A DNA stretch of 63,782 nucleotides, the filler included, from Lenisia limosa (Eukaryota > Protista > Breviatea): assembly GCA_001655205.1 (NCBI GenBank). It is 10 parts of 10 records of this genome, joined end to end, with 100 filler letters (N's around TTAATTAATTAA, not from the genome) between each part and the next. Parts side by side here need not be neighbours in the genome. Positions count along the whole stretch, not along the records: positions 52,920 to 61,966 come from LPNZ01005013.1; 9 more parts are not named here. One strand, written 5' to 3'. Positions 5,203 through 62,480 of this stretch are shown in pieces. Made by a program: the position numbers and the translations under genes. The first letter of the stretch is position 1. The number at the start of each line of letters is the position of its first letter. The notes beneath the pieces are model-generated. The model saw only the letters and a program-made list of their open reading frames with translations, was not told the DNA's origin and made no database searches.

Positions 5203-6900
5203 ACTTCCTTTCGAGTCTTGAGCAGTCAGCGGCCGACTCGCTCCATGACACCATGTTGCATGCATCTCTCCTTAGTAGGCCTGGTTTATGGTGTCAATGT
5301 CAGCTTTTTAATAACTTACAACTGGAAGAACAATGTAACTGGCACAGCTTTTCGAGTAAACACGACCTTGTTGATTCTCTGGGATTCTCTGCTTCGTTTT
5401 TTTTTTTCTTTCTGGATTACGTTCCCGCTTACTCCCCCCCNNNNNNNNNNNNNNNNNNNNNNNNNNNNNNNNNNNNNNNNNNNNNNNNNNNNNNNNNNNN
5501 NNNNNNNNNNNNNNNNNNNNNNNNNNNNNNNNNNNNNNNNNNNNNNNNNCGCCTAACACGTGCGTTGCGTTGCACTGCCACGTATATTGCATACCTTGTT
5601 ACGAGGGACCGTCTTGCTGAGAGTCTTGCTGATATCAAGGTAAATTGGGGACTATAATAATATGGTTTATTGTTTCATTACATTTATCATCTTATATTCG
5701 GTTTGTGAATTAATAAAAGCCACTGATCGCGAAAATCTTGATCAAATGAAGATGGCAAACACTATGATTGATATGCTTAAACGGAGGTTATTTAATATCT
5801 TACCCCAATGTAAGATCCTTTTTGTTTTCCAAATATTAGAGGCAAAATTACAATATCTAACTCACACCTTATTAGGACCTCTCCCGGCCTTCTTCATCGA
5901 CAATCGAGGACCCGGGTACCTGGCTGGCCACTCGGGGTTCCTGGCTAGTAGACACTCTCACCGGCGTGCATTGCGAGGCACCAGAGGAACCATTCATGGC
6001 TCCTCTGTTCTGGGCTCTCAAAATACAGGTATGGCTCTGAACCAGTTGTTCATTTCATTTCAGTTCAGATTTATGTTATTTTTATCAAATTATTACTACA
6101 TGTGTATAATAATTGAAATAAAGTTAATCAGGAACAGTTCAGATGTTATCAGATCATATATATAATACATAAGATACAGTACATGTATTTCTCACCAGTT
6201 CCATTCCACTTAACACCACCACCACCCTTGATTCTCCTTTTAGGCATTCCCGACCCTCATATCGGCTCACCTTCTCACGGAAGTTCTTTCTGTTGTCCTC
6301 CAAGCCGTTCCAGTCTCTCCTGCATCAGCTATCATTGCAGCCTTTTTTGTGTACGCTGCAAGAATAATGGGGTCTCAGTATTTTTTTCTTTCTAAATCAT
6401 ATGATATGTATGATACCACTCACTAAACCAATTCTGCGTCTTTTAAAAGGACAGCTTAATCTGGGCGTTGCTTTTCAAAGTACAATTCAAAATTCAACAA
6501 TGCCAATGATACACTTGGGTGACACTGACAAACTCTGCAGACCCCTGACGCCAGCATTATCACAGCACCACAACCCGGCGGTCAAGGCGCTGGCATTGGA
6601 GATTACTGGAACAGAGGGACCGCTGAGTCCAGAGAAGTTGGTTCGACCATATCTTCAATATATGCCATACTACATGTATATTATATAGAAATATAATTAT
6701 ATATATATATCATATATAATATGTGCTGTTTCATATTATTATGATCACCATACCATATGTAACTTTTGTTGCTCCCACCACGAACACCGCACACACAAAG
6801 TTTAGACTCAGGATATTGGATATGTTTCTTTCTTTCATTAAATGTTCCATTTTTACGATGGGATGCGGTGGTCAGAAGCGACTGGCCGGGGCTTTGTTTG
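5203..6900 (+). CDS. Multi-exon hypothetical helical protein fragment
   Basis: AG/GT-bounded exons such as DFLSSLEQSAADSLHDTMLHASLL, RLTRALRCTATYIAYLVTRDRLAESLADIK, AFPTLISAHLLTEVLSVVLQAVPVSPASAIIAAFF, RPLTPALSQHHNPAVKALALEITG. No family recognised. Confidence 0.5.
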
Positions 6901-7029
6901 TTGTGTTGNNNNNNNNNNNNNNNNNNNNNNNNNNNNNNNNNNNNNNNNNNNNTTAATTAATTAANNNNNNNNNNNNNNNNNNNNNNNNNNNNNNNNNNNN
7001 NNNNNNNNGGGAGCTGCACGATAGGCAAA

Positions 7030-9330
7030 TTGAGCTAATCCCGGACACCTTTTTTCTTCGAAGGTGTCGTGGGGTTGGAGGAACCATAGTTACTAGATAT
7101 CGAGAAAACCGACGGAGCGCCATGCTTCGCCCGTTTCTCCGCAATTTCTTGTTGTCGTTGCTGCTCAAGTTTGGTTTGCTTCTGTCGCAGTAGCTCTTCT
7201 TGAACCGCCTTTTGCCGCTACAGTGTTAATTGTTGATCCAACCTCTGAGAAGAATTATCAAATCACTCGGACGCCAACAGGTATAGTGAAGTTATGTTAA
7301 CTGTCATTCTTCAATTGGAAATATTTACTAGTTTGAATATTTCATACCATTCACAATCAAACAGTCTTTGCAAATGTGAATAATGCTTATTACAGGGTTT
7401 CAAGGAACCTTACCTCTTCTTTTCGCTTGTTATATTCAATCTCTTCCTGGATTCTCCTTAGTCGGCGCTCCTCGATCTCACGTTGCTGGGGATGTTATAC
7501 AAAGAGAGAGTTCCTGGAGATGTTAAACAAAGAGAGAGTTGCTGCGATGTGAAATAAAGAGAGAGTTGCTGGTGTGTTAAACAAAGATGAAAGATAATTA
7601 CTATTATTATCCAATTCACAAAAAGCAACAGAAGAGAGGGGACGTTACTCAAAGAGTAGCTATTCATGAAAAGCTCACCTTTTCTTCGTATTCTCTAGAT
7701 TTTTCTTCCCTCTTCAGCTTCTCTTCCTCCTTTCGTTTTTGCTTTTCCTCGTACTAAAAGATCAGTGAGATACGTCACAATTGGAGTCTGATCACATTAA
7801 TTATCAACCTTATTTTTGTATCATTGCTATATGNNNNNNNNNNNNNNNNNNNNNNNNNNNNNNNNNNNNNNNNNNNNNNNNNNNNNNNNNNNNNNNNNNN
7901 NNNNNNNNNNNNNNNNNNNNNNNNNNNNNNNNNNNNNNNNNNNNNNNNNNNNNNNNNNNNNNNNNNNNNNNNNNNNNNNNNNNNNNNNNNNNNNNNNATT
8001 AAAAAGCCCGGAAGAGAGACTGTCATATAACTTCTCGTTTTATTAGTACAATAATGTACTGCATTATTGAGAGCGCTATTTAAGACATGATTGTTAATTA
8101 TTTGAGAGGTGCGTTCAGGGGCTTACACTGCATTGTTCGTGGGGTTATCCGCTCGCTTCTTGCTTTCTACAAAGGATGACAAAGAGGTAAATATAAATGG
8201 CTTGAGACGAGGTTAAAATGCTTGAAAGAATGGACTGTCTACAAGATTGTTGGGAATCAATATTAATATTATATAATACTCAGTATTGGTGGTATGGTTT
8301 ATTTGATACACTGAAAATCTGCCTCAGAACTACACGCCTATGCAAATCATCCCATTCGGGTGCGTGAAAAAAACCACGCATACTTGGTGCAGATGTGTCG
8401 TCTTCGGAATCATCATCCGTCGGCGTTGCTTTCTAAGGCATGAGCAATCAAAAACAATCAACGAAATGGGTTACAAGTCTCGACGTGCAGTTGGAAGCAG
8501 TCGTATGAGTTGCCAATAATCCTACCCCTACCTCCATCTTTTCCTCCATTTTACGATCGAAGAGCTTTTTTTGCTTCAGATAAGCTAGGGGGTTAAACAA
8601 TATGACAACATAAAAATCAAGAAAGAAAAAAAAAAAAAAATAGAGATGTATAATATTATGTTAATTAGGAGTTATCAGATCTAGTTAATCACCATGCCAA
8701 GTGTAACAGCAAGACAATAAAGATATCGAATGGTAAGGATAAAATGAAGATATAGCAACTGTGATAATAGTATGTTTGGCTCACAGTTACAGTCAAGCCC
8801 CTTCAACAGCGTGAAAACGAAAGCCATATACACCAAAAAAAAGAGCTGTCATTATCCCCTCCTCCAATCTCATGTCATCAAGAGGCCCACTTTTCATGGC
8901 CTTGCGATGGTAGTTGTCCCTGCCCTGCGAGAGAGTGTAGGGCATAGGAGGTGCGTCTCCCTCGTACTCGTCAACTGCAGAGTGAGGGCAGAAGAGAACG
9001 TAGAAGCGACTGGATCAGGCCGAAGCCGTCCACTTTATCAAGTTTACGGAGAATTACATCAAACCACCCTACGTACGCCAGTAAAATGATATAAAGAGAA
9101 AACACAAAAACAAATGAGCAGAGGATCATAAAAGGCACAAACAACTTAATATGTGCAGAGTACAAAACTTCTCAATGAAGGTTCGGTTCAAAAATCAGCA
9201 ACCAGAGCTATTCTATTATAAACAGAATTAATTTGTCCCGACAATACGCAAAGGAGAAATTCCATCCTACATCCATAAGCTCTAGCATCATCACGGTTTT
9301 GGCGGCGTCTTGCTCTAGGCATCTTTTCCT
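7030..9330 (-). CDS. Hypothetical charged coiled-coil protein, multi-exon
   Basis: Exons MPRARRRQNRDDARAYG, YLKQKKLFDRKMEEKME, YEEKQKRKEEEKLKREEKSREYEEK, QQREIEERRLRRIQEEIEYNKRKEE and AVQEELLRQKQTKLEQQRQQEIAEKRAKHG...KKGVRD*. Boundaries approximate. Confidence 0.55.
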
Positions 9331-10097
9331 CTTCTTTGCAAGCGGACGTCAATAAAAAGTAGAAGATGTTTCAAAGGGGGAGTGGAAGAAGCCAGAAGAG
9401 CTGTAGTAGGATTGATCTGGAGTAATTATTGGGGGATTCGATTATGTGCTAGCTTGGGTAGTGTTGAATAATCTTATGCTGTTATGCTCTGTTGAATACA
9501 CTTGTGTTTTTTTTCTTTTACGCTTTTGCTTTTATTTTCTCCCATTCTCCTCAATTATTTTTATTTCTTATCTCCGCGACCGTAAATTAATTTGTGGCTA
9601 TTTTGACTGATTTGACATTGTTTACAAGCTTTGTGGTTTACCATGTTAACATGTTCTGAGAGTGTTCTGCAACACTGCTGCAACATGTCTTGTTGTTGTG
9701 AATGTTATAATGTTATTCAGAATATGTGGATATGGGCAGTTGCATCTTTGGAGTCATAGAGTCATACTATACATTCATTATTAACAATCGAGAAAGCCTT
9801 GAGGCATTAGCGTTGAGCAGTGAAGGGGTTGTGCCCCTCCCAGTTCGTGAGTTGGTTGATGAGAGCGACAAATTCATGGCCCTACGATTGTTAGACAGAT
9901 TCATGCTAAGGCTGACAGTATTGCCCCTTTGCAACATCCCAATGTAATGGTAATTTGAATAAGTAATACACGAATGCACAAATGTATGTTTTGTGTTAAG
10001 GTTTTCTTTTCAAAGACAACAGTAAACCCACAATACTTCATTCTAACCAAAAGAGAGTAGTCCATTTAGCATATTCGATTACAAGCTACAGCCCCAT

Positions 10098-13000
10098 TCA
10101 CCATTGAATCAAGCCATGGTTTATCTTCGTCCACCCATTGGAAGCTCCTGTGGGCATGAAGAAGGGAATTTCTTTTGAAACAATAAAGAGAGATGTCGAT
10201 GAGTGCATAAGGATAGTTGGCTCATCCCAATAGGAAAAGGTGGTCAAAAACATCACAGCAACATTTGATATGTACAAAGAGAACACTATCACTATGTGGA
10301 ACTGCGCTAAAAGGTGTACATACATCATGTTAAGCAAAGAAATGTATTATTCGCCATATTGTACCGCTATCCCCATACCAGCCGCCTCTTTTCGGTGCCA
10401 CGCGGGGTGCGTGTGCCANNNNNNNNNNNNNNNNNNNNNNNNNNNNNNNNNNNNNNNNNNNNNNNNNNNNNNNNNNNNNNNNNNNNNNNNNNNNNNNNNN
10501 NNNNNNNNNNNNNNNNNNNNNNNNNNNNNNNGAGGAAATCTCCAAATATCCTCTCCTCCACAATCATCAAAAATACGAAATAGCCCCATACATCTTGGGT
10601 AGGTCCCTGTTGAAGCCAAAGGTAGTGGCTAAAAGCGTGACATCAGGTGACAAATGCTCTTGGAGGGCGGGTTTTATCTCATATCTAAAGCTTCCCAGCA
10701 TTCTCAAAAAAAGACTTGAGATGTTTTGAGATATTCAGTCATTTTGTGCCCAAGAGGACAGCCTTGTTTCAGTCATACCAGTTGAGTGGGTTCCTGCTGT
10801 AGATTTTGTCTGCAACATCTTGGAGGGTTGTAGTCCAAATATCTGAGGGAATGACACAGAAAAGACAATTGGAACACAATAGGTCCAGCAAAATCGAGAT
10901 TACCCAGGGTTTATCCAAAATATCACATAATGTAGAAATACGTTAAAAAATCAAGAAAGACAAATAAGACATCCACATACCCATCATTTGCCTGATTTGC
11001 ATGTGGATGGAAAGGAGGTGCAGGGGATAGTCTGGCCTATCGACAATGGAGTTGACAAAGAAGAGGTCATTTTGGTGAGGGCAGATCTCCTTTTGCCACA
11101 CTGAGGGGGATGTTATAGAAAAGTGCTGAGATGCGTAATAGCAAGATTTTTCGGAAAAAAAAGGGGGCAACATCATTATCATTGGTGATGTGCCGACAAA
11201 ATCTCCCTTGACTCAATTAAAACCTTTCGTTATTCAGCCCTTCATTTAACCATAATCCTTAACTCAGTAGCTCCAAGACACCATGCTTACTTGGGAACAT
11301 AATGCGTTCACTTGGTCGACTCCAGCCATGGAAGTGGCCAACATGGTCAAAAGTGCACCAGAACTCCTGGGGGGGGGGGGNNNNNNNNNNNNNNNNNNNN
11401 NNNNNNNNNNNNNNNNNNNNNNNNNNNNNNNNNNNNNNNNNNNNNNNNNNNNNNNNNNNNNNNNNNNNNNNNNNNNNNNNNNNNNNNNCCAAAACTAGTT
11501 TGCATGATAGTTGGTGGGGGCACGTCTGAGAGTCAGGAACATATGACAGAAAAAGCAAGCGGTCCAAATCAAGAATAGCCACTTGTTACTTATCATCAAA
11601 AGGTATTTCAATTTTCGCTCTGAGCCAAGTGCTGCAAAAAGCTTTGGTACAAAGACAAAAATATTAAAAGAAAATAAAGTCAAAATCAGAAGCCATCATA
11701 AACACATGCTGTCCGTTCCACATTTCATACCCCATTAGAGCGCTCAGAGAAGTCAAGCCAAGACTCCCACCTGAAATGTTGGGTAAAGAGGATATGGGGT
11801 GTTATGCAATCGGTTCAGCCACCAACATAGTCTGGTTTTTAGTTTCGAAGAGTGACACGAGAACACCAAGAGTCATGTCCCTTGAGAAAACACTGTGCTT
11901 CTGATAGGTAAAGGGGAGGGGTTCCTGTGTTTTCATTTGTCTCCCAAAATACATGTGTTTGTATGGTTTCTGGGTTATAAGAAGAGAGGTACTGGATGAA
12001 TTACCAATCAATGAAAATATTGATGACATTATGGGAGGTATATTACTATTGAGAGCATGTATAGTATGTGAAATAGATCTTTTGGTTTTTGTTTCATAAA
12101 TCAGGGTTTCAAGTGGAAAGTTCTCAGATATCAGATTACAAAATCGAAGAACAATCCTTTTTAAAGTTATTTATTACTTTATTTAGGACTGATAATGACT
12201 CTGAAATCAAATTTGAGAGAAGATAAAGAAGTAAAAGTCGCTGTGAATCACATTCAATAGAGGGCAAAAAAGAATAGCGTGCTTTGGGTGAGACAAATTT
12301 CCTATTTGAAACTCTGCTTTTAGTCCTTCCCCCCCACAGTTGGGTCTTCTCCAACTTGCCATGGAGATCTCCAGATCTGTCCATTTGAGTCTTGAAGGTT
12401 GTCTGAAAAGTATGAAGAAAAGGAATGCTTGGGAGGGTCGGGCGAAACAGATTTGGGTCAACAAAGGTGGAAAAAATGAAAGTAACTTGGGGGAGGGACA
12501 AACCACATTTTTTCGCCAAATTCCTTCACCCTCCCACTCATTCCTTCACACGCCTTCTTATCTCCGGAGCCGCAGAGGAGACCAGTCCACAAACAAGTGT
12601 CGCATCCAGCTGGGTTGCATGCTGGGGGGTAAAGTGGAACATCCAGCTGGGTTGCATGCTGGGGGGTAAAATGGAACATCGTGTTCATTTATCTTAAGTC
12701 GTCAAAAGTAGGTAGCTTGGGTTATATTTGCTCCTCTACACTCACCCTATACTATCTTAAGCTCCTCCCAACACATCAGACAGCCGACCTTTCCTGCACG
12801 CTACGCCCTCACTCCAATGGGCCCACTCCTGGATCGTTTCACGCAGTTCTACGAGTCTGTTCGGTTAGCCATTCACAAAGAAGCGTAGAATGATATATGT
12901 TAGGAGAATTTCAAGAGAACTTCGTCTTTTTAGCACTTAAAAAGCAACATTGCTTCTTGCTCGGAAAAAGAAGGTTTCCATGATAGTTCAAAAGCTACTA

Positions 13001-13363
13001 CCATAAATCAGGAATCAACAGTTGGTTAGATCGGACCAATCCATGCTGGGGAACCAAAAGACAAAAACCCCAAACTGTTTCAATGAAGCATCATCGTAGG
13101 TTCTCTTGTGGAAGATGGGGGAAGAAAGGTGATCGTCTGGAAAGCTTAATTCAACTCCAAATTCAACTCTGTAATAAGGGGAATATGTTGGATTTGGGTA
13201 TTGCCAAAGATACTCTATTTGAATAAATAAAATAAGTGAAGTGGAAGGGTGGAAGAGGACAAAATAGCAGAGCTTGAGCAATAGAGAAGAGCTTGGTGGA
13301 GATCTTCATACCAGCAATGGCCAAGCTGAACAGAAGAATCGCAAGCAGCAGAAGGTCCTTCAT
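10098..13363 (-). CDS. Putative secreted or membrane hypothetical protein, multi-exon
   Basis: ATG at 13363 gives MKDLLLLAILLFSLAIA (signal-peptide-like), followed by a GT-AG intron into EYLWQYPNPTYSPYYRVEFG. Many downstream GT-AG exons (ETIQTHVFWETNENTGTPPLYL, EFWCTFDHVGHFHGWSRP, YEIKPALQEHLSPDVTLL). The 3' end and single-gene status are uncertain. Confidence 0.45.
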
Positions 13364-14578
13364 GGCAACGGGCAAGCAACGGGTTGTTTGAACTTTGAAC
13401 GTTGAACAGGTTGTTTGCCCTGGCTGGCTGGCCTTGGCCCTGGCAGCCCTGGGCGGGCCCCAGCAAGGCTGCAGATCAAGCGGATCTGTTCACATTGTTC
13501 GTTTTTTGCTTTTCCCCCATTTGTCACCATGTCCCCATTGTGTCAATCGTGTCCTTTAGCTTGAGTCTGAAAGTCTTTACCATCTTTATATTGGGATTGA
13601 TTCAATCCAATCGAGGAAAATTCGACTCGGCTTTGTCGATTATTTGACATCTCGCTCTTCCTAACTGGACCGCTTTCATCAGTTTGAGCTTGTCTTCTTA
13701 AGAAAAATGCATAGCGCCAAGCTAACGGAAACCTACATTCTTGATTGACAGATTCCCTTTCTGGCCAATCCAAAATGGGACTCTTTAGCAATAAGAAGAA
13801 GAGGGAGAAGGAGGAGCGGGAACGTGAGGAATTAAGACAGGTTTGCCCATCTTGAAGGTTTAGGCACACCAAGATACGAATCTATATTTGACAAACATAA
13901 CTTCGCGTTTGTCTTCTGTCATGTTAACCGTTTAGAGGGAATTGGAACTTGCCCGCCAGCAAGTTGATCTTGAAAAACAAAGGGCGGAGATCGAAATAAT
14001 GAGACTCAAGGCTGAGGTCTGGACTGGGTCTTTGGGAAAATAATGAGATTGCAACTTTCTCACATTTTTTCTGTTTTGTCCTGTTTTTGTTTTCTTTTTT
14101 TTCCTTTCACATACTACTACTATACTTTGAACGTTGAACAGGTTGTTTGCCNNNNNNNNNNNNNNNNNNNNNNNNNNNNNNNNNNNNNNNNNNNNNNNNN
14201 NNNNNNNNNNNNNNNNNNNNNNNNNNNACCCATATATTGGAATGATATTGCTTAACTGTACTTTCCCAGGATAATCATATGTTTCTTTGTTATGTACCAC
14301 TGACAATCTAGATGGCCCAGATGCAGCAATCCCAAGTAGCACAGCAACCTGTTTGTGGCATGTTGTCTTTGTCTTTGTGGCCATGAGGGGGGTTGTCAAA
14401 ACCCAGCATGTATAGAAGTGATAATAGGTTACTACGGAGCATTATTTATTCACCCTTTATGGTTTAATTAAGCTTCCTCTTTTGTAAGAGTCCATTCCAA
14501 CAAGCCTTAATTTTACGCCCAAGGCCCACCAACCTTCCGAACCCGAAACGGAAGGAAAGAGTCGCCCAGTTAGCACCA

Positions 14579-17500
14579 ATGATAGTTGGAGATGCTGAGA
14601 TGGGATTCCAATCCGTTTTCCACAAGCATATACTCTTCCTGGTGTTAACTCGTTCAGACGGTTATAACAAAGGATTGAACCTTATTATTCATGTAAATAA
14701 TGTATTAACTTGGTTAATAAAAACGTTAAATGTTAACTCGCTAGTGTCGGAGCAACTGACGTGTTGCGTTTGTATGGATATCTTTGATGATCCTGTGATC
14801 AACAGCTGCGGACATAACGTCTGTCGCAAGCATATCAGCGTAGGTGTGGGGACTTTTAATGAGATAATATTGGATATTGGGTTTGTTTTGTCAGGCGATT
14901 TTTGACTTGTCTTTGAAAAACAGTTCCGAAGAGTTTCTCACACATTCCAGAAGTTACACGGCCAATGCCCCACCTGCCGGAAGAGTTGGGATAGCGACAC
15001 GTCGAACTACTCTCTCAAAGACATTATCAGGGTGAGCCATATCTCTCAGAACAATTCAATGATGTTAATGTCTCATGATATACAACATGAGATTATATTT
15101 TGACTAGCAGCCGCACTGAACGTTGATCAATTTTTTTTCTGAAACATTGAAGAGTATGTAACTATATAGACCTTCAATGCTGGTGATCTTGCTGAGTCCC
15201 CCTCCGCTGCCCAACAAGAGTTTGTGGCAACTGATGTGAATTATGAACTTGTGCAAAATGTTGCTACCATTTTCCTATTTGCGCGGATAAAAACAGGTGT
15301 TTGATGCACAGCTGTATATAAAGCGGTTTTTACTTGTCAATACTTGCGATAGTGCCCATAATCTGACTAATTAAGGAGACAGCCCGCTAGAGTGGTTGCC
15401 TCAATTTCGGAGGCACCTTTCCAGCCAAGTGTAGGTTGGGGTGAATATGGGGTTCTCTTTTTGAATTTCCATTTTTTTTATCTTTTCAGAGTGGATGGAA
15501 TGATGAGACTGACGAATTACCAGGTTTGACACCATTCGGCTATTAAAAGGCGGGATTCCATATTGGAAACCCCATGATATTGGATAATTTCAAGGCATTG
15601 AACGGACCCTTGAATACTCTCTTGGGATTTATTTTTGTGTGTGGTGATTTTGGCGTATGTTCAACTTTAGATTAAGAATTCTATCCACATGTGTCCCGGA
15701 TAATATCCAAGACATTTTCCTGTTTTTTTTTTTGGGTATTTTCATGTATTGACATAAATTTATTGAGCATAATTTTACTTGCTCTCTTTTAGGTAAGCTT
15801 GAAGACATGTCCGATGCCCCACTTACTGAGGATGAGAAGCATGATGGTCAAAAGGTGGGGTTACGAGTAAAGGGCTGTTAATCTAATGATTTTGATGCTC
15901 AAATGGCTGAGGCATAGTATCGAAGTTTTTCAAAGATTTATTATTGAGAGGAGTGTTTACTGATGTCACCTTCCCAGCTACTTGTTACGCGACTTCTCTT
16001 TTCAAAAGTAGCCAATAAAGACCCCGAACACCTGCTGCCAGGTACGCTTCTCATCATTGTCCCAACTAATAATCCTAACTATGCTGGGAGGCACGCAGAA
16101 AGCTGTGTGCACAGATTTGTGCGACAAATGATTGGGTGAATTAATATTATACTATAATTCAATATTCTTATAAACGTGATGGTGTGGATGGCTTCGGCTA
16201 GATAAAACCTTGTTTTTTTAAAGATAATCGGTTTAGAAATCCTCTCCACGTGGAATGAGATCGAGGGTCGAGAGAGTCGTGATAAGTTCTTCCTCTTCCT
16301 TGACCAGTTGGCCTGGGTGGAGTATTAACCTTTCATAATGACATATGCGTGGAGATATTTCATCGATGAATATCTTCATTCAGTCTTTATTGTATGACTA
16401 TTTAGAACGAAAGCCATGTCAACAGATGGTTTGTGAGATTCTCTTTACCTGATTTGCTGACTAAATATCTCAATCAGACAAGTCAAATGGTTTATTTTCC
16501 TATAATTCTAATTAATCTCAAATAAGCATTCAGCTTTTTGACAACAATGCTCAACTCTTTAGATGCCTCAGTTCGTATCATGAACATTTTGGGCTTCCCC
16601 CAAGAAATCAACAGAGTGGGGCTATTCTCACTACAAACTGCCTCGAAAGGCCTCCAAATAACATGGTTTATGAGGTGGCTATATTTCATAAACAACTAGG
16701 TGGTTCAATTTTAATCGTCAACCCTCTGCTGGGTTTATGTCTGCTGTATGTCACTGTGTTTTACCTTTGGGGTTGTTTTTGCATGTTGTCAAAATGTTCA
16801 TTCTCCCTAACCTCCTCTGATGGTTTACACCAATGTCCCTTATAGGGCTTCACTTCGGTTCGAAAAAAAGACTGAATTTCTCGATAAATCCTCGAAAACT
16901 GTCGATATTTTACCGGGTTTTTTTGAACCGAAGTGAAGTCCAAGTCCCTTAGTTTCATCCCTTCAGCTCCTGGGACTATTCAACCGAAAGGAAGACAGAA
17001 TGATCATCAACGGCCTGCTATTTGCCCTCGGAAACATGATGACCGCGACACCAGAACGACAGGATTCGGATGTCCTCAAGGCCGGCCTTTTGTCTAACGT
17101 CGTAAAGGCTCTTGAGAACAACATCAATGACACTGATATTTTCGAGTTAGGAGGATGGCCAAATAACATACTGTTCATGATAGCGTCGCCCAGTTGATGG
17201 GTGTACTTTCTCAATAGCCCTGTATGACTCTCTTGGAGAAGCCATTATTGAGCTTCGACCCCCATTATTGAGCTTCGCATTGACCCCCCTTTAGGTATTC
17301 AGTCGGAATTGCGAGCAACGTCAAAGGCAATTGTGAGGGGGGGGGGGCAAGAGAAATAGAAGGGGGAGAGGAGCATATTATGTAATTTTAGAAACAAATT
17401 GGATCAAAATTCAACTTTATTCGAGATTCAAGCGATTAGTTAAAAATAATTGAATATAAGATATACCGCGCGAATCGCTCAGATTGCTATTTTGTCTTTT

Positions 17501-52451: not shown

Positions 52452-53278
52452 GTAAATTACATGGGAAATGAGAGAGCTGGGCGAAAGAATATATTTGTCT
52501 GCATTCANNNNNNNNNNNNNNNNNNNNNNNNNNNNNNNNNNNNNNNNNNNNNNNNNNNNNNNNNNNNNNNNNNNNNNNNNNNNNNNNNNNNNNNNNNNNN
52601 NNNNNNNNNNNNNNNNNNNNNNNNNNNNNNNNNNNNNNNNNNNNNNNNAAACAAGGAACCCTCTTGCTGTGGGGGGATATAGGATAACATATTTAGGTCT
52701 TCCCTACGTTCCCAAAAGACTGAATTTCTCGATAAATCCTTGACAATATCGATATTTCACAGTCTTTTCGGACCTAAGCAAGACTCTTCATATAATACAT
52801 GAATACATATACATGTTCTNNNNNNNNNNNNNNNNNNNNNNNNNNNNNNNNNNNNNNNNNNNNTTAATTAATTAANNNNNNNNNNNNNNNNNNNNNNNNN
52901 NNNNNNNNNNNNNNNNNNNGGGGGGGGGGGTGAGGACAAAATTGGAAAATTTAAGAAACAAAAACGCCCAAATCCACTCTGTTGGCTGATAACACACGAG
53001 TGTTGATAACAACAAAACAAATCAATAATGATATTTTTTATTGGGGGAGAGTGTTAAAAATGAACAATTGAAATACAAAAAATAATCACTCTCTGTTGAC
53101 TGACCATTTACCATGCAAAGGGCTGAAAATAAGAACACAAAAACAAAGTAAAGGCGTGCGATTAGAGAATATAAGGTACGTAAAACCTTAATATCCCCCA
53201 TTTTTAATCTCTCTTCAGAAACTGTTGTTATATTCGCTAGTACTTATGCACCATTATCTCGTATACTCCGCATATCTA

Positions 53279-53374
53279 CGGCTTCATTTCGGTTCGAAAA
53301 AGACCGGCAAAATATCGATAGTTTCGGAGGAGTTATTGAGAAATTCAGTCTTTGTTCGAACCGAAGAGAAGCCC
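53279..53374. mobile_element. MITE family M copy
   Basis: Canonical TIRs; begins 4 nt inside a minus-strand GTAA donor. Confidence 0.88.
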
Positions 53375-55000
53375 TTACATTCGGTAGCAACCACTCCTCC
53401 TCCTCTTCCATTAATGACACTGGTCTTTCGGGGGTCTTTGGGCCCGAAATGGGCCAAAAAACCACTGTTCTAGTGCTTCCCTAAAATCCAAAAAAGACCG
53501 GTCAAATATCAATATTTATCGAGGATTTATCGAGAAATTCAGTCTTTTTTCGGACCATAGGGAACCTCTTATCAAACCGGACCCCCCCTCTCACTATTAA
53601 GCCACAGCATAGACTTTTCACCGATCGTAGCCATAACCGGATCGTGGCCGATCGTCAAATTGACCGCCGTGGGTCCGTCAAGATAGATCATATCCGTATC
53701 CGTGGCGTGCGCTACGCCAGAAGATGGCATAGAGACGCCAAGCATGAGACACGGGCCGCTGCTGGCGCCAGGGAGGCATGATGACGTGTCATCGTTGAGT
53801 CCGGTTGCGATGATGGGTGCGGCTGCGGGGGGGGGGGGNNNNNNNNNNTCTGTTGGCTGACAACAAACAAACAAACAAACAAACAAACAAACAAAGCCCC
53901 CACCAGAGCCGAGAAGCCCTTCTTGCTTCTAAACACTATGAAAATGACGGCCTTGATGATAGCGACGGCAGCGAGGAAGAGCGGAACGTCCTTGTAATTC
54001 ACACCGGAAAGTGCGACTAAAAGAACGACCGGCTGGAACGTGAGGAAAAGGGACATTAGAGAAGATGGAATTGGGATATGGCCTTTTTTTTTTATTTCAT
54101 TCAATGTAGTTTCTTGCTATTTGTCATATACAATGCATTTATATGTATCTGTATATCATATGTATACTGTATCTATACGCAGTATATTATGATATACATA
54201 GTACGATGTACGTCATCATAAAATCTTAAAAAACGTCCATCCGCCCACAATGACGTCAGCGACACCGGTCCAAAACCCTGCCCAGCACAAAATAGTCTGG
54301 AAAGAGCCACGGTTTGGGAGGTTCGGCTCCGTAGGGAGAAACAGTGAAGGCGGGAGGGACACGAAATGTTTCCCGGCTCGGGAGGCGGCCAAAATTGCCG
54401 GAGTCATGAGAAGGAGGGAGAGGAAGACGGAAATGAGGGCGCCCGTTATGAGCGGCGTGGGGAGGGGGCTGCCCACTATTGAAGAGAGCTGGGGGGTAAA
54501 ACGAAGGAAATTTCGAAGAATATTGGCGTAAAGGTACTAATCACGAACCGAATAATCTGAAACTCCAAAAAAAAACAAGCAACAACAAACACGAGCACCC
54601 AACACTAAAACTTGACAAAAACCAGCTGACAAAACACAAAACGAAGGAAATTTCGATGTTGAGGAATTTGATGATAGCAGGAAATGATAAGCACAAACGA
54701 AGATTGGATGAGCTCAATACCCACATCCGCCTCAAAGAGCCTCGCTCCAACCAAAATGCCAACACTATATCACTGAACAACGCTACATCCAAGACAGAAA
54801 ACACTCAACTTCCACCTTCCTCAACTCCGCCATGGCGGCGTTTTAACAAAGATTGGCAGTTGTACCGAACGTGATGTGCCAACATTGGTCACGAATGCCC
54901 CCTACCGGAAAGAGCGTTAAGCACGAAAAGAAGGAATAGTACCACTGTCAACAGCATAATGACGACAGTTGGAAGAGGTATGCGCTGGATAGAGAAATGG
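53370..55000 (-). CDS. Hypothetical multi-pass membrane protein fragment
   Basis: Hydrophobic exons RIPLPTVVIMLLTVVLFLLFVLNALSG, LITGALISVFLSLLLMTPAILAAS, PVVLLVALSGVNYKDVPLFLAAVAIIKAVIFIVF. Confidence 0.45.
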
Positions 55001-56779
55001 CTTGGTAATCAGATCACATTCTCAGAGTGTATATCGCCATATCCTTCAGTATTTATCATTTAGACATTTAGTGGCTCCAATAATTCACTAAGAGGTCCTA
55101 GCTTGTGAAGAATCCAAAACAAGCAATCAATTTAATAATATTCGCACATGGGGGAACATCTCACAACATTGACTTTAAGTCAACTACTTTAGCTTTCACC
55201 TGTATGACGATCTAATGCCAGTATAATGCTATAATGCAGTATAAACGATTTTTAAACACGATATTATAACAAATTTATACTAAATAGAGGTGTAGACCTC
55301 ATTCCGAATAAGGCAAGTAAGTCTTTTAGATGCGTTTCAATCATGATTCACGCAGCCATTTTTCCCGTTACCGGTTTCTGCTGTTTCTAGTTTAGTGAAC
55401 TTATAATAGTGATCTTAACTCAATAAATAGACGCTTATAGAGTTGAAAGAAGGCCGTTCTTTCGCCTTTCATTTGAGCCCAACACTTTCCCCTTTTCTAA
55501 ATCCCTCCTTGGGACACCCCTTCTGCTGTCTTCGAGAGGTGGGTTTATTAGTTTTAGTGTACTTTATATTCCTTATTAACATGACTCTGACGCATCCTGG
55601 TGTTTGTTCTATAGGATGATTGCATCAGTCTGTCAAGGCTATCTAATGATTAGAGTTTTGAATTAATTTTCTGAATTATATCGATAATCCACGCGGTATC
55701 TCCAACTTTAAAGATTTTAATGAGGAATATTAATATAAACAATATTAGTATTCTCCCTAAGTTTGTCTTATTCTTTGAAGCTTGACTCTCTGGAGCTTCA
55801 ATGAAAAGTTTTCAGTGTAGGTTTGGTATGGTACAAATTTATGAAATCATAATGTTAATTGGTTTTGACAACAAATCATTGGGATTTACACAAGGCTACA
55901 TCGACTTACCATTCCTGGGAAAACGTAGGAATTCACATATTTTACATGGGTATTCCATGGAATTTTGGGAAATTTGAAAACATTTATATATTATGAACTC
56001 TAACCTGCTGCATTCAACTGGTAATTTACCCAGGGCTTTTCCTCCTGTTTCTCGCCTTTGGCATCTTGCTTGACGCGAGTTTTTCCGCTGAAGTTGGCTT
56101 AGTAAGAGGGGCATCATTACGTACAATATATTTAGTTACCCAGATTTCCGAAAAAGATTGAAAAAATATCGTAATTTATCAGCGTTGATGAATTTTTTCT
56201 ATGCTACCTTAGATAGTATTATTAAGAAGACTCAATTACTAAATTATTTACCTCAATAGCCGCCGCCTGAACATGGGGTCCCTCTGATCCCTGATGTGGA
56301 GTTACCTCCCGCATCCAGAAAAAGATCCAACCACCACAAGTATGTGAACTGAGATGGTTTTGAAATATGACTGAGATGGTTGGGAAATATGACGGATGGT
56401 TTGATGGTTTTGAAATACTAATTATTATTTTTTCAGTAAAGTCTCTATTGAAACTAGGATCATAGAGATCCAGCTGTTGACTACACAAAGAAACATCCAC
56501 GAAAAAGACAGAGTTTTAACATTCATCACTATGAACCCATTACACTTATAATTATTTGACAACAACCCAAACCCCGCCCCTATGATCGCATCTGTACACC
56601 TGGAATTTATTCACATTTTAACTCAGCCCAATAATAAATGCAAACTATGAACATATCATTTGAATTAAATGTGGTGAAATATTGAAATATAGTACGCCTA
56701 TTTTACTTCACAAGGCTATAGTTGCCTTTTTAAAACAATTTTGGCGAATAAAAATTTCACATCGTAGGCTAAAAATTAT

Positions 56780-59700
56780 TGCCTACACTGGTGGGCTTGT
56801 AGTTGATGAAGCTGCTTGCACCCCTGGAAAAACACGAATTTCGGTAGGGGGTGTTGGGATATCAAAGATATTGCTGTCTATTCTGATAAAACCAATGTAA
56901 TGAAAGACGTCATCATAAACACTATTAAAATCATATATTTCTTAAATGTTTGTATCAAATGACTATCACGTAAGCTTGTGTAAGAATATCCGTAATTGTC
57001 AGGAACAACAACGTGCCTTAATCACAATATCGCTCATTTTTCGACATGACTGAATAGCAAACCAGGACTTTTTCGTCAACCCTTGAGTTTTTCCCACAAA
57101 ATTAACAAATTGTCCATGTATATTTTCCACTTATTAGCATTTTTACTTCGTAATTGTACCCCATTATCAGGTTGGCTCTACCATTCCGACTTCCCCCAAC
57201 TGCGGACTATCTGCTGCAGGCCCCCATGTAAACTGGTAAGTATTGGTGAACATATAAACTGGTGAACCAACATTGCGAGTCAAAATATTCCAGTATCAAC
57301 TGACAACTATAAGTCAGTGAGACATATTTCTGCTGTATCATGGTTTGTTTTTGTATAAACAAGACTTCATCTGAATAATTCCCTGAAACAATGACTTTAA
57401 ATATATTTTCTTTGTTCAAATTATGCAGCGTCCTCACATACTTTCAGCTTCTTAACCTGCTCGGATGTTGATAGTAGCGGCAGAAATAACATCATTTCCG
57501 TCCAAAAGGTTTGAAACAACAAATATTGAAATAGAAGCTAATTGATTAGAGAGACTACCTCATCAATGAGGTTATTCCCTCCATCGTGAAGTGGTATGAA
57601 GAAGCAATTACCGTGTTGACCCCCCAGCAATCAAGACGACTGGGTGAACGTATGTGATTCTATTTTGGATACAGGATTTTTTAAACGAAGAATTTTGAAT
57701 TATGCGATTAGTATACATATTAAGTATGTATATCATCACTACGGCGCATTGACTTGGAATTCATGTGAAAACGGTGGAATTATGGGAAATTCCATAAAAT
57801 TTTATGGAAATTTGAAGAAATTTATGGGTTTCCAAAATACCACAAGGGATTGCCAAGGAATACTGTTGTGTTTTGAAAATGCTCCTTATATTTGAAGTGG
57901 CAATACAACTCTAGGGCGATTGTGTTAACCTTTCAGTTCTTTCTGAACAATGGCGAAATTGGGAAGCTCTTGCTATCATACTATTTTACTCACATAAATA
58001 AAATTCAGATACCTTTTCTTGGGTTTCACCTCACAGTTCTGTGTAATCAGACCCCCAAACTACCCCATGATCCATCATGGATATTCCCTGGCATGGCGGC
58101 CGAAGACGACATTGCGATTATCATCACTGCCCGTCCCGACTTAGGTGAGCTAGATTTGGGAAGTCATGTTTCTTTGGCGAATTCAAACCTCTCTAATAAA
58201 CTATTTTTTGGGATAAGGGTTATTTGACAGGAAGACAATACATTTGAAATAAATGCTCTTAATACCAATAACAAGTTTATCATTAAAGCTTCCATTCATT
58301 TTACAGCCTTTTTTCTAAAAAAAAGAGAGAGCAAAGGAGCAGTCATCAAAACTTCCATCATCATCCCTCCCAGATATCACCTCATTATACAAACCTCAAA
58401 AATCACGATTTCACCTCTTAATACGCAGCAAGTGGAACTTTTGGTTTCGGTGTGCCTTGCCAAATTTCCTCTTCTAACTCAGTGGGCTATTAAGGACTAC
58501 ATTTTATTGTATTTTGCTATTAAAAAAATACATTTAATATTTTTAACCTGTGTGCTCTATTCTGCAATATACATATACATACTACATAAAATAAATAGAA
58601 ATCATTCATGTTCAATGACAATTTAGCGTCCCTCTCTGGGCTGGGTAAACATCAACCCCCTTCGAATTGACCCGACAGCTAATGATCCTGTTCATGGAGC
58701 ATTCTATGTATGTGGAGATATAACATTGATGTGGTGAGGGATAGTTTCCAAAAATTACAAAACCACAAGATAAATAGCACAAATAAAAACTTTAATTTTT
58801 TAGGCCAATATAATCATTTGACTGATCAGGCTAACATCAACCTAATTGGGGAATTCTATTATCTTGGCAGGCCAATATGATTGCACGGGACTTTGCTAGG
58901 CCACTGGGATTCTCATCAGCCTTCTTGCCGTCGCCTACGTCTTTTTACGTCTCCAAATCAACTTTCACGTTGAGTGGATATTATGGATTTGTTTAATCGT
59001 TAAACTTGTTACAAATGAATACTATCAAGATTAACTCTTAATATGAAATAATGTGTGAAGGTGTGTCTAATCAGCTTTGAACTGAATACAATTCAATAGT
59101 CCCCAAGTGTGTTATTATTGGTTTTGGTTTGAGAAATAATACTTATATCCAATAACTCGTATTTTCGTGATGGTGTGGACGGCTTCAGCCAGATAATTTA
59201 ATCCGATATCTCTGATATGTGTGATGTTGAGGACTACTTTGTATCATTTGCCAGCAATACATACAGTAACCATTAAGGCGGCAACCAACGTCATCGTATC
59301 TCACGTTCACATCGAACCTCTTCCACATTTCTTCTCCAAATGGTAACATGGTGCAATTACATTACATTTTTGTCTTTTAACTGATATATTATTGTGTGAT
59401 ACTGAATTTCAAGCACAATAATCCCTTAATTTCCGTTTAAGTATCAGAAAACAAAATGCTATGTTGAATATTAACCAAATCTCGTCTTCAAATTTGTGAA
59501 CAAAATATCTCGTTTCATTGCCAAAAATTGAATATAATGTCACCAAAACTGCCCTTTCTGATTTTTCCAAACAAAATTGGTTAATCTAAATATCAGATAT
59601 CATATTAAGAGATTTCTTTTAAAATTCTATGTAATATGACACCATTTTACCCCCATTCAGTACAACAATGGGTTAGAAGCCACACTCAATGTCCAACAGC

Positions 59701-61950
59701 TGTTGGTGCCCCGTTATTCGTCGAGGTGAGTGATATTCATCTCATAAGTAGGACACCGTGCGATTAATAAGAATATCTTTTGATTTTGAAGTGAGACATT
59801 TTGAAGCATGAACCATTTCATGAGTTTTGATTTCAAATTGATTCAATTAATTAATTTGACGAAGCGTCATTATTCATTATAATAATAGCATTCGGGTAAT
59901 TCATAATAATGGATAAAATATACCTAGGAGGACTTACTATTTTACTGTATTTGACCAAATGTACTTCAGTGTACAATTGTATTCAAATAACTAAAAACTT
60001 CAATTCTTAGCTCAATTGATTTGAATTTTCATATTTTTCAGAATGGTGAAATCTACTGGAACACCTTGTTCTTCTTTGACGAATATATGACTGTTTGTGG
60101 GTCTACAAAGAGATTCAGTTGTTACCCCAGATCATACTTTAAATTTCCAACACAATGATTAATTAATACCCATAAGATTAAAGTCGTTAAAAGATTTTCT
60201 TGATATTTTAGTCGGCCACAATTAGAGGCTCTGATATGAAGCGTTCGGCACTTAGCTTGGAGTTTTTCAACGAAATGGGGTATATGGCAATCCTGGCATA
60301 AAAACATTCCTGTTTGAAAAATAAATGGTAGATTTGTCACAACTTCAGATGGTATGACGCCAATTTTGATTCCGCACAGCCGTATTTCTGGGGCAAAAAT
60401 GCTGGATGCACCCTGTTCAGTCAAGGTCTGGACTGGTACATTTCTCAAACTAGGGATATGAAATGGAGTTAATTAGAATGTGTATCAGTAATCGCATTCT
60501 ACGTGAAACATACAAGTTTTGGCAATGGAAGGTCGTTTAACGATTTTACAATCTAGTTTGTTCTGAGCGCTCAGCACCGTACCAATGTCCCAACATCAAC
60601 CAAAATGGCTGCACCTACGACCGCAAAGCCCGTGGGCTTTGCACCACCCAGGTTAGTGTCAAGGGGAGACTGATCTCTGACAAGTCCCACAAAAGCCTCA
60701 CCCCATACACACTGTTATATTAACCCACTGTATCCCACAGACATATATACACCCGGCTTAATAATACCCAAATCTCTTCCTGTGACTTAAATAAAGGTTG
60801 ACGACTACGGATCCTGCCAAGTGATTTGGCCGTATAGGAACGGAAGATGCACCGATCTTAACTCACCCAACGCTGAAACGTAAGGGATTTAATAAGAATT
60901 TGGGAAAAAACTATTTCTATTCAAAGATAATATTATATTGGAGATATGTATGTATTTCTGGTGAATAGTCTTGTTCTTAAACTTTTTTTCCATTTCTACA
61001 GTCTTTAATCAAAAATAGATAATTCAATCTTGAACTAAATAGTTATCACATAGTTAAGGCTCACATCGGTTCTAAGACTGAATTTATCGATAAATCCTCT
61101 AAAATTATCGATATTTTACTGGTATTATTCGAATTGAAATGAAACCCTACAGATAGTACACAATATTAAATTTTCCTTCCCTAACGTGACATTACTATTT
61201 AGCACCCAATTCGGAGAGTCATGGGGAGAAAGCAGTCTCTGTTTCATGTCGACTGTCAATACCCTGCAATGCTGCAATGAACAACCAAGGTTAGTCTAAA
61301 TGGAGGGGGCTAAGGGGGTTTGGTGAGAGGATGGTTGAGTAGATGAGGATGATTTAAGTGGGGTAATTATTAACGAGGTTGCTTTGCTATGAAAGTGGTG
61401 TGTGAGTAATATTTAATATACTATGACTTTTTTTCTTTTCACTCTGTATAAATGATTTTAGTGTATATTCTCAAGCTAATTAACTAGGTGTTACAAGCAA
61501 CGTTGCAACGAAGATGGTTCCTACGAAATTTTTGTTGGAGAGAACTGGTATGTCTTTATCACATGTTATCTCATGATGAAGTTTAACTCAAAATATTGAA
61601 GAGATCCATTGAAATGTTACCAATAATTAAAGTGATAAATATCTATTGTCATACAATAAAGTTGTCATTTATACGGTCACTTGCGTTAATGGTTATATTT
61701 GTAATTGGTTGGTCTCAAACTTCAATATCTTGGAGTCTTAGTAATTCGGTTAAAAGGCGAATGATGAAACAGTAATTACATTCGCACCCAATATCTCAAA
61801 AATATATATGATATCTCTTATTAGCGATTGTAGAGAGCTTCTGCCAGATACTCATATTCATATTTCTCAGCTCTGCATAGTAACACTTTATAGGCTTGAC
61901 TGCCCTCTTGGCCAATCCAGAAGCGTTTCTGGTTATCAAAGAAACTCCTA
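56780..61950 (+). CDS. Leishmanolysin/GP63/invadolysin (peptidase M8) homologue lacking zinc ligands
   Basis: Colinear M8 hallmarks: KRDYLINEVIPSIVKWY, DIAIIITARP, FGFGVPCQ, RPSLGWVNIN, LGFS, WVRSHTQCPTAVG, DEYMT (Met-turn), SALSLEFFNEMGWYDANFDSAQPYFWGKNAGC, CTYDRKARGLC, FGESWGESSLCFMST, CYKQRC. Start codon not located. Confidence 0.88.
57739..57865. repeat. Dispersed repeat family F
   Basis: GGCGCATTGACTTGG...GGAATT..ATTTTATGGAAAT..GAAGAAATT shared with 38781-38900 on a different assembly piece and partly with ~55915-55985. Confidence 0.7.
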
Positions 61951-62480
61951 TGTCAGGTGAGGGAGGNNNNNNNNNNNNNNNNNNNNNNNNNNNNNNNNNN
62001 NNNNNNNNNNTTAATTAATTAANNNNNNNNNNNNNNNNNNNNNNNNNNNNNNNNNNNNNNNNNNNNGCTATATATATATATATCATATCTGTACATACAA
62101 TCTATAGCGATATGTCCTTCAAGCTAGGGATACGCTCTAATACATGGAGTAGTTTTTTTAAAAAAAAAAAGCCAAAGTAGTACAAGATACACAGGGATAT
62201 CAAAACACGTACTCCCCTTCTCCCCATCAATCAACTCATCAACTAATCAGAGTTTATTTTGGGTTTTTTTTCCCGATATATTACTATAACATTCTACGTA
62301 CGCTGGAGTGATGGGATGCNNNNNNNNNNNNNNNNNNNNNNNNNNNNNNNNNNNNNNNNNNNNNNNNNNNNNNNNNNNNNNNNNNNNNNNNNNNNNNNNN
62401 NNNNNNNNNNNNNNNNNNNNNNNNNNNNNNNNNNNNNNNNNNNNNNNNNNNNNNNNNNNNNNNNNNNNNNNNNNNNNNNA

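What the first reader, a model, noticed from the sequence alone, without database searches (positions are those of the whole stretch)
58871..60120. Leishmanolysin-like pseudoprotease: all three zinc His ligands and the catalytic Glu are replaced
Seen: phase-0 splicing gives ...HGAFY|ANMIARDFARPLGFSS, so the HExxH position (canonical HEMAHALGFS) reads RDFAR (58886-58900). The third ligand (canonical SHW/SHI) reads IYW (Tyr at 60054-60056), while the Met-turn (DEYMT), cysteines and WGKNAGC remain and I saw no frame disruption in the exons I could splice. Inference: an M8 fold retained for a non-proteolytic role (adhesin, decoy, receptor), with a basic, metal-free cleft. Inactive GP63 paralogues are known in trypanosomatids, so any novelty lies in the completeness of the loss and the lineage.
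Basis: partly seen in the sequence, partly recalled or inferred. Interest (0 to 1): 0.72.

Follow-up and report, generated by a model that had tools for sequence, protein, structure and literature searches.

The report
Zinc-free leishmanolysin-like gene (dead protease)
This is a many-exon gene for a very divergent leishmanolysin/invadolysin-type (M8) protein that keeps the fold's landmarks but has lost all three zinc-binding histidines and the catalytic glutamate, so it is most likely a non-cutting relative of a protease, a known kind of thing, and its expression is unproven.

Summary
On the + strand, 57429-61547, I could chain 14 exons with GT..AG borders and consistent phases: 389 in-frame codons with no stop, and exons at 47.6% GC against 31.4% for introns.

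Tested exon by exon against a profile of 125 true M8 proteins, the five best of 495 six-frame segments are all my exons, in the right order. The colinear chain scores 50.7, against a maximum of 17.9 in 100 shuffles and 4.4 on the minus strand.

Anchored on LGFS, the HExxH position reads R-D-F-A-R (58886-58900). Anchored on the conserved Trp, the third ligand reads Tyr (60054-60056). The Met-turn, the Gly, the long Gly-to-third-ligand spacer (67 residues) and most cysteines in the exon segments that align are kept. All 125 references have H, E, H, H and M at these columns.

No alternative HExxH exon exists in the piece. Expression is not shown: the only RNA run touches only repeats. No close relative was found, and both gene ends are unresolved.

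Best reading: an intact, long-diverged, catalytically dead M8 homologue (about 0.6). The main rival is a decaying pseudogene (about 0.25).

Dead GP63 paralogues are already known, so this is a new member of a known kind, of moderate to low interest.

The parts
57429..57508 (+). exon z (ends ...NNIISVQK), the furthest upstream exon I could chain with confidence
   Evidence: AG/GT borders and phase fit into exon a. It has no profile hit of its own. From my memory of GP63 it resembles the region just before the conserved 'KRD.L...IP'.
57550..57649 (+). exon a (RDYLINEVIPSIVKWYEE...)
   Evidence: Second-best of 495 six-frame segments against the M8 profile, columns 76-104. Matches M8 ORF L097 across the a-b junction.
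58037..58218 (+). exon b (LCNQTPKLPHD...EDDIAIIITARP...SHVSLANS...), long form
   Evidence: Phase fits exons a and c. 58162-58185 SHVSLANS matches SHCNLANA of M8 ORF L030, and the a-b junction matches L097. GC is 45.6%. It contains a strong-looking internal donor, GTGAGC at 58145, which would break the frame if used.
58627..58707 (+). exon c (RPSLGWVNINP...HGAFY)
   Evidence: Profile columns 205-223, with R, P, G, N and P kept. Found by tblastn with several invadolysins.
58871..58968 (+). exon d, the former active-site helix: ANMIA-RDFAR-PLGFSS...
   Evidence: LGFS anchors on profile columns 240-243, so R=H234, D=E235 and R=H238, with Gly kept.
58886..58900 (+). RDFAR in place of HExxH (CGG GAC TTT GCT AGG)
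   Evidence: All 125 reference M8 proteins have H, E and H here.
59278..59342 (+). exon e (…LFHISSPN); its 5' border (AAG acceptor) is the weakest in the model
   Evidence: Phases fit exons d and f. By hand alignment, ISSPN-V continues into exon f as the counterpart of profile 'IVTPRV' (columns 305-310, consensus).
59661..59725 (+). exon f (QQWVRSHTQCPTAVGAPLFVE)
   Evidence: Profile columns 312-327, with R315, H317, C320 and G325 kept. Hit by 11 invadolysins in tblastn.
60042..60092 (+). exon g: NGEI-Y-W...DEYMT, holding the third-ligand position and the Met-turn
   Evidence: W=W341, E=E349, M=M351 and T=T352, so Tyr 60054-60056 sits on H340. By my hand count against the consensus, about four residues of the Gly-rich loop before it are missing.
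60212..60279 (+). exon h (SATIRGSDMKRSALSLEFFNEM-G)
   Evidence: Phases fit exons g and i. No profile hit of its own. It is placed by order only.
60349..60425 (+). exon i (WYDANFDSAQPYFWGKNAGC...), the best-conserved exon
   Evidence: Pfam PF01457 E=0.014, positions 321-348. 1LML is the top PDB hit, E=0.14. My own M8 profile gives E=2.7e-7 at columns 374-409. Hit by all 124 M8 queries that gave any tblastn hit.
60557..60651 (+). exon j (Cys-rich: CSERSAPYQCPNINQNGCTYDRKARGLC...)
   Evidence: Profile columns 427-442, with C430 and C440 kept.
60797..60879 (+). exon k (VDDYGSCQVIWPYRNGRC...)
   Evidence: Phases fit. No profile hit of its own. It is placed by order and by its resemblance to the consensus '..ADYCP' stretch (consensus), aligned by hand.
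61203..61289 (+). exon l (...FGESWGESSLCFMST...)
   Evidence: Profile columns 516-529, with C524 kept. tblastn match ESYGEKSLCF.
61488..61547 (+). exon m (CYKQRCNEDGSYEIFVGEN)
   Evidence: Profile columns 549-564, with C549, Y550 and C554 kept. The 3' continuation is unresolved.
61633..61707 (+). tentative exon n (…VVIYTVTCVNGYIC…)
   Evidence: This is one of three downstream acceptors that keep an open frame of at least 18 codons after the phase-2 donor at 61547. I chose it for its Cys-containing reading, which suits the C-terminal domain. There is no profile support. Alternatives are read-through to a stop at 61597, or a tail reading from 61662 whose long run of Leu, Ile, Val and Phe looked membrane-spanning to me by eye.

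Best explanation
The piece carries most of a spliced gene (at least 14 exons, + strand, 57429-61547 and probably beyond both ends) for a very divergent member, by descent, of the leishmanolysin/invadolysin family (peptidase M8, metzincin clan).

The protein keeps the family's scaffold. That includes the N-terminal 'IP' helix region, the RP..G..N..P strand, the xxGFS end of the active-site helix, the long spacer, the Trp after the third ligand, the Met-turn, the WY...WG..GC block and the cysteines of the C-terminal domain.

The four residues that make an M8 protein a protease are all replaced: His1 to Arg, Glu to Asp, His2 to Arg, and the third His to Tyr. Neighbouring active-site residues have also changed (HWEKR reads YWNTL, and the Gly-rich loop before it is shortened). 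Without three His ligands it cannot hold the catalytic zinc, so it cannot work as a metalloprotease.

By inference, it is made as a secreted or surface, disulfide-rich protein that uses the old substrate cleft to bind rather than cut. The homology, the substitutions and the intactness of the modelled exons are shown here. Expression, location and binding role are inferred.
For: Gene model: 13 introns of 41-408 nt are all GT..AG, and every junction codon is in phase and none is a stop. There are 389 in-frame codons with no stop, where intron sequence carries 0.071 stops per codon (P about 3e-13); the two off-frames of the same exons have 11 and 30 stops. Exons are 47.6% GC and introns 31.4%.

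Homology: the top five of 495 six-frame segments against a 125-sequence M8 profile are exons a, m, f, j and i, colinear on the + strand. The chain scores 50.7, against 4.4 on the minus strand and a shuffle maximum of 17.9. Without exon i it is still 24.6. Pfam PF01457 and PDB 1LML are the best hits of exon i.

Of the columns that are at least 90% conserved and lie in locally aligned exon parts, 35 of 58 are kept, including seven Cys.

The loss looks old. The Arg codons CGG and AGG are two to three changes away from CAY, and the surrounding site is remodelled, yet frames, splice sites and cysteines are kept. This argues for continued selection.

Literature: E-to-D alone abolishes L. major GP63 activity, and H264, E265 or H268 mutants are dead (PMC11957388).
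Against: No RNA evidence exists. The one polyA RNA run of the same study has contigs only on the interspersed repeats, not on any exon.

No orthologue or paralogue was found, so there is no dN/dS test.

Several splice sites are weak: AAG acceptors for exons e and k, and donors GTTATT, GTTGAG, GTTTGT and GTCTGG. Exon b also holds a consensus-like donor (GTGAGC, 58145) that would break the frame.

The start codon, signal peptide and propeptide were not found (no H.C.H or C.HD motif in any frame), and the 3' end is ambiguous.

Exons b, e, h, k and z have no profile hit of their own. The whole-protein test was not run because the exons were not joined.
Confidence: 0.6

Rival explanations
1. It is a decaying, unexpressed pseudogene: a duplicated M8 gene that lost its function, including its active site, and has not yet picked up a stop or frameshift in the parts I could model.
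For: There is no RNA contig on any exon in the only RNA run. The 5' end with start codon and signal peptide could not be found, and the 3' end is ambiguous. There are weak splice sites and a frame-breaking consensus donor inside exon b. The gene is peppered with high-copy interspersed repeats in its introns. No relatives were found.
Against: 389 codons over 14 exons are open and all 13 junctions are in phase, and the exon/intron GC contrast is sharp. Conserved Cys, Gly, Pro and Trp are kept at 35 of 58 highly conserved aligned columns, while the active site carries multi-step codon changes. That means long divergence without loss of frame, which a neutral copy would not be expected to survive.
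Confidence: 0.25
2. It is an active enzyme after all, either through an alternative exon carrying HExxH and a third His, or through metal ligands that moved elsewhere in the fold.
For: The ends of the gene lie outside what I could model. Pseudoenzymes with relocated catalytic residues are known in general (abstract of PMC10211241). The Asp at the Glu position and the Tyr could in principle touch a metal.
Against: The only + strand HExxH in the piece (59807) sits in a 12-codon open stretch, is not followed by xxGF, and lies after exon f, out of order. The only LGFS with context is exon d. E-to-D alone kills GP63 (PMC11957388). Two Arg at ligand positions are not metal ligands (general chemistry).
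Confidence: 0.04
3. It is not an M8 gene at all, and the motif resemblances are chance in AT-rich DNA.
For: Only one exon reaches Pfam at all (E=0.014, below the gathering score). An exhaustive phmmer search with that exon found only spurious repeat proteins.
Against: The colinear multi-exon chain against an independent M8 profile far exceeds the shuffles and the other strand, even without the best exon. Of the 125 M8 queries, all 124 that gave any tblastn hit strike exon i.
Confidence: 0.02

Closest known systems
Leishmanolysin / GP63 (Leishmania major, PDB 1LML; MEROPS M8, Pfam PF01457)
   Same: The order of conserved blocks is the same, as is the long insertion between the Gly of HExxHxxG and the third ligand (67 residues here, 62 in GP63 per PMC11957388). 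The Met-turn, the WG.NAGC block (1LML is the top PDB hit of exon i) and a Cys-rich C-terminal domain are shared. It lacks the Cys-rich insert of animal invadolysins between profile columns about 105 and 165, as protist-type M8 proteins do.
   Different: All three zinc ligands and the catalytic Glu are replaced. The Gly-rich loop before the third ligand is shortened. No propeptide Cys-switch motif was found. The gene has many introns. Overall identity is very low.
Invadolysin / LMLN of animals (P0014-P0133, for example the Nematostella, Drosophila and Xenopus entries)
   Same: Same family. Exons a, c, f, i, j, l and m align colinearly to a profile dominated by these proteins. A short motif in exon b matches a cnidarian-type invadolysin ORF (L030).
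   Different: All 120 retrieved invadolysins have H, E, H, H and M and are 40-60% identical to each other. This gene gives them only about 20-35 bits per exon and lacks their N-terminal Cys-rich insert.
Trypanosoma cruzi GP63 groups G9 and G10 (PMC11957388)
   Same: They are M8 paralogues judged proteolytically dead from their sequence, yet intact. In T. cruzi they are expressed as highly as, or more highly than, active groups, and a non-enzymatic role has been proposed for them.
   Different: They have lost only the Glu (to Leu or Phe) and keep the zinc ligands. Here the whole metal site is gone. They are intronless kinetoplastid genes in large arrays.
Other metal-site-less relatives of zinc enzymes, such as carbonic anhydrase-related proteins and FtsHi (from my own knowledge and PMC8197885)
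   Same: They follow the same logic: the fold is kept and the zinc ligands are replaced, in CARP VIII by Arg. The protein then works by binding.
   Different: These are unrelated folds. The comparison is an analogy only, and no membership is implied.

Membership tests
Peptidase M8 (leishmanolysin/invadolysin, PF01457), membership by descent | Sequence similarity to the M8 domain along its length, in order | tested here: met
   Tested exon by exon. The best five of 495 segments are colinear exons. The chain scores 50.7 against a shuffle maximum of 17.9 and 4.4 on the minus strand. Exon i hits PF01457 at E=0.014 and 1LML at E=0.14.
Peptidase M8 | Whole-protein score above Pfam's gathering threshold | not tested
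   Single exons cannot reach 21 bits; the best is 14.5.
Peptidase M8 (as an active metzincin) | HExxHxxG zinc-binding and catalytic motif | tested here: not met
   It reads R-D-F-A-R-P-L-G at 58886-58909. Only the Gly is kept. 125 of 125 references have H, E and H.
Peptidase M8 (as an active metzincin) | Third zinc-ligand His after the long M8-specific insertion | tested here: not met
   Tyr at 60054-60056 aligns to H340, next to the kept Trp. The spacer of 67 residues is kept (spacer counted from the exon peptides).
Peptidase M8 / metzincins | Met-turn | tested here: met
   D-E-Y-M-T, with the Met at 60087-60089 on M351 and the Glu on E349.
Peptidase M8 | Conserved cysteine framework | tested here: inconclusive
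   C320, C393, C430, C440, C524, C549 and C554 are kept, and C214 is Asn. The N-terminal cysteines and exons b, h and k could not be aligned column by column.
Peptidase M8 | Signal peptide and propeptide with a Cys switch (HRCIHD-like) | tested here: inconclusive
   No H.C.H or C.HD motif occurs in any frame of the piece. The 5' exons were not resolved and may lie upstream of the piece.
Pseudoprotease (non-peptidase homologue with a function) | Intact reading frame despite the loss of catalytic residues | tested here: met
   Fourteen exons, 389 codons and no stop, with all junctions in phase. This covers the modelled part only.
Pseudoprotease (non-peptidase homologue with a function) | Expressed, and under purifying selection | tested here: inconclusive
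   There is no exon contig in the one RNA run, which is not proof of silence. No relatives were found for dN/dS.
Pseudoprotease | No zinc binding and no proteolysis | not testable with these tools
   This needs recombinant protein, metal analysis and an activity assay.

The most novel reading that the evidence does not exclude
This is the founding example of an old, still-selected, completely metal-free branch of the M8 family outside the kinetoplastids. The zinc site is filled by an Arg-Asp-Arg-Tyr cluster and the cleft has been turned into a binding site. The branch is so diverged that exon-wise searches of billions of proteins find no close relative.
Probability: 0.3. Interest if true: 0.5.

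Novelty: new member of a known kind. Interest (0 to 1): 0.35.

Why it matters
If the gene is expressed, it is a natural experiment on what the leishmanolysin fold does without catalysis. GP63 and invadolysin have proposed non-proteolytic, adhesive roles that are hard to separate from cleavage in the active enzymes. It would also add a case of complete metal-site loss to a family where only single-residue losses (T. cruzi G9 and G10) are described in the papers I could search. In practice it warns annotators that an 'M8 peptidase' label on this gene would be wrong about its activity. Beyond that it is an ordinary example of a widespread phenomenon, the pseudoenzyme.

Tried and rejected
1. Pfam and PDB searches on single stop-free segments. 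Only exon i hits M8, and the active-site exon d gives nothing.

2. The search for related loci with exon b in JGI metagenomes. Nothing was found, not even the piece itself.

3. Word search with the exon d segment and with the exon b segment. No homologue was found.

4. The one exhaustive phmmer job, run with the exon i segment. It returned 13 hits, and the ten I scanned were DUF285, Ig-like or other non-M8 proteins, i.e. spurious repeat matches. In hindsight this was a poor use of the single job.

5. ESM Atlas with exon b. No usable hit.

6. RNA evidence. Only one RNA run was offered, and it lies only on repeats.

8. Rfam found nothing relevant.

9. An alternative HExxH exon is rejected.

10. 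The 132-codon open frame in intron b-c (58228-58623), which tblastn extends into from exon c as a 'DFILYV'-like match. I rejected it as coding because it is 22% GC at the matching part, has no profile score, and is separated from exon c by a stop.

11. The short form of exon b (donor at 58145) is rejected because it breaks the frame and removes a stretch with M8 similarity.

12. Upstream exons x and y (about 56700-56850 and 57165-57227) and the 3' exon n remain tentative.

13. Left out by rule: joining the exons into one protein for Pfam, HHpred-like comparison, AlphaFold or fold search.
Full report
**What is in the sequence**

The piece (52920-61966) is AT-rich eukaryotic DNA, about 35% GC. 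Reading the + strand in three frames, I could chain 14 exons from 57429 to 57547... through to 61547.

- All 13 introns (41-408 nt) begin with GT and end with AG.
- Every split codon is in phase and none is a stop.
- The exons hold 389 complete in-frame codons without a stop. Intron sequence carries 0.071 stops per codon, so the chance of this is about 3e-13. The two off-frames of the same exons carry 11 and 30 stops.
- Exons are 47.6% GC and introns 31.4%.

Exon c ends ...HGAFY at 58707 and exon d begins ANMIA at 58871. Positions 58886-58900 read R-D-F-A-R, followed by PLGFSS. Codon 60054-60056 is Tyr, followed by Trp. DEYMT follows, and WGKNAGC lies in exon i.

**Is it really a leishmanolysin relative?**

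Single exons are too short for the public profiles. Only exon i reaches Pfam Peptidase_M8 (E=0.014, profile positions 321-348), and leishmanolysin 1LML is its best PDB hit (E=0.14).

Exon-wise searches for close relatives all failed:
- JGI metagenomes.
- Two word searches.
- The single exhaustive phmmer job, which returned only spurious repeat proteins.

I therefore fetched genuine M8 proteins another way. A degenerate HExxHALGF DNA pattern in metagenome contigs gave five ORFs that Pfam confirms as M8. Their alignment A1 then retrieved 120 invadolysins.

I built a 664-column profile from these 125 proteins and searched it, with filters off, against all 495 stop-free six-frame segments of the piece. 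It ranks exon i first (E=2.7e-7). The next four are exons a, m, f and j, and exons l and c follow close behind. All are on the + strand and in the same order on the genome as in the profile.

The best colinear chain scores 50.7. That compares with 4.4 on the minus strand and a mean of 7.8 (sd 2.7, maximum 17.9) in 100 residue shuffles. Without exon i the chain still scores 24.6. Homology to M8 over the length of the domain is therefore established without joining the exons.

**The active-site positions**

- Exon d's LGFS aligns to profile columns 240-243. Counting back without gaps puts R on His234, D on Glu235, R on His238 and P on Ala239, and the Gly is kept.
- Exon g's W aligns to Trp341, and its E-Y-M-T aligns to E349-A350-M351-T352. 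This puts Tyr on His340, the third ligand.
- All 125 references have H, E, H, H and M in these columns.
- The spacer from the Gly to the third-ligand position is 67 residues, counted from the exon peptides. That is close to the 62 of Leishmania GP63 (PMC11957388), and this long spacer is the M8 hallmark among metzincins.
- The surroundings are remodelled as well. The consensus HWEKR reads YWNTL. By my hand count against the consensus, about four residues of the Gly-rich loop before it are missing.
- In the locally aligned exon parts, 35 of 58 columns that are at least 90% conserved are unchanged, including seven cysteines.

**Could an alternative exon restore the site?**

The only + strand HExxH in the piece (59807) lies in a 12-codon open stretch inside the intron after exon f. 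It is out of order and is not followed by xxGF. The only GFS with M8 context is exon d. An exon outside the piece cannot be excluded.

**Weak points of the model**

- Exon b contains a consensus-like donor (GTGAGC at 58145) that would break the frame. The long form is favoured for two reasons. The stretch after that donor (SHVSLANS, 58162-58185) matches SHCNLANA of a cnidarian-type M8 ORF. The a-b junction also matches a protist-type M8 ORF nearly residue for residue.
- Exons e and k have AAG acceptors.
- Exons z, b, e, h and k are placed by order and phase only.
- The 5' end (start codon, signal peptide, propeptide) was not found, and only tentative exons exist near 56700-56850 and 57165-57227.
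- The 3' end has three options.
- Intron b-c holds an unusual 132-codon open frame. I judge it non-coding: it is 22% GC where it resembles M8, and it has no profile score.

**Expression**

The stretch is fully held by one DNA-like run at about 35x depth. That run's contigs break at high-copy repeats. The only RNA run, a polyA 'metatranscriptomic' library from the same study, has contigs only on those repeats. Expression is therefore neither shown nor excluded.

**Interpretation**

The Arg codons CGG and AGG lie two to three steps from His codons, and the whole site is remodelled, so the loss is old. Frames, splice sites, GC contrast and cysteines have nonetheless been kept.

This is what a selected, non-catalytic protein looks like. 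It is not what a neutral relic of that age would look like. I put about 0.6 on a live pseudoprotease and about 0.25 on a pseudogene.

A binding role for the old cleft is inference by analogy. In T. cruzi, GP63 groups G9 and G10 have lost the Glu, are still expressed, and have been proposed to act non-enzymatically (PMC11957388). E-to-D alone abolishes GP63 activity, as that paper reports from earlier work.

**Novelty**

Dead members of protease families are common, and dead GP63 paralogues are published. A search for papers that combine leishmanolysin with pseudoprotease or pseudoenzyme terms listed none among its top results. I also found no description of an M8 member lacking all four residues. 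That absence is weak evidence.

I file this as a new member of a known kind, of moderate to low interest.

There is therefore no whole-protein Pfam score, no profile-profile comparison, no AlphaFold model and no fold search. The source organism was not identified: the run names are coded. The intron sizes and splice signals fit a small invertebrate or a protist, but that is a guess.

Noticed in passing
window 56427-56502, 57760-57860, 59147-59195, 61074-61154; also 53272-53377 and 53469-53571: Short interspersed repeats of very high copy number. Summed contig depth is 1,000-17,000 against about 35 for the unique flanks, and the source run's contigs break at them. The copies at 53272-53352 and 53471-53546 are inverted relative to 61074-61154 (about 80% match). 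They are the only parts of the piece touched by RNA contigs. There is no Rfam match. They look SINE- or MITE-like.
   Followed up: partly
window 58228-58623 (+ frame 1): A 132-codon open frame inside the AT-rich intron between exons b and c, about 0.08 expected by chance in the piece. Its last third weakly resembles the M8 'DFILYV...AYC' region and is separated from exon c by one TAG. I judged it compositional (22% GC, no profile score), but a relic of an older exon arrangement is not excluded.
   Followed up: partly
window 58145: A consensus-like donor (GTGAGC) inside exon b that would shift the frame if used. It is a possible source of an unproductive isoform.
   Followed up: no
window 61662-61772 (+ frame 0): An open frame that reads as a long run of Leu, Ile, Val and Phe followed by a basic tail (…KRRMMKQ, then a stop). 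By eye it looks like a C-terminal membrane anchor, but no prediction was run. It joins exon m only through a weak phase-0 donor, and it may be chance in AT-rich DNA.
   Followed up: partly
window 53420-54900: A GC-richer block (45-51%) with a 10-N gap at 53839-53848, long low-complexity open frames on both strands, and a K/N-rich 124-codon frame (54500-54871). Pfam gave only one weak, sub-threshold hit (MupG_C, E=0.0045). Its nature is unknown.
   Followed up: partly
L002, L097, L014 (metagenome contigs fetched): Active M8 proteases of about 510-535 residues with a C-terminal teneurin/tenascin-type EGF domain, from unidentified environmental eukaryote-like contigs. They were used here only as references.
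   Followed up: no
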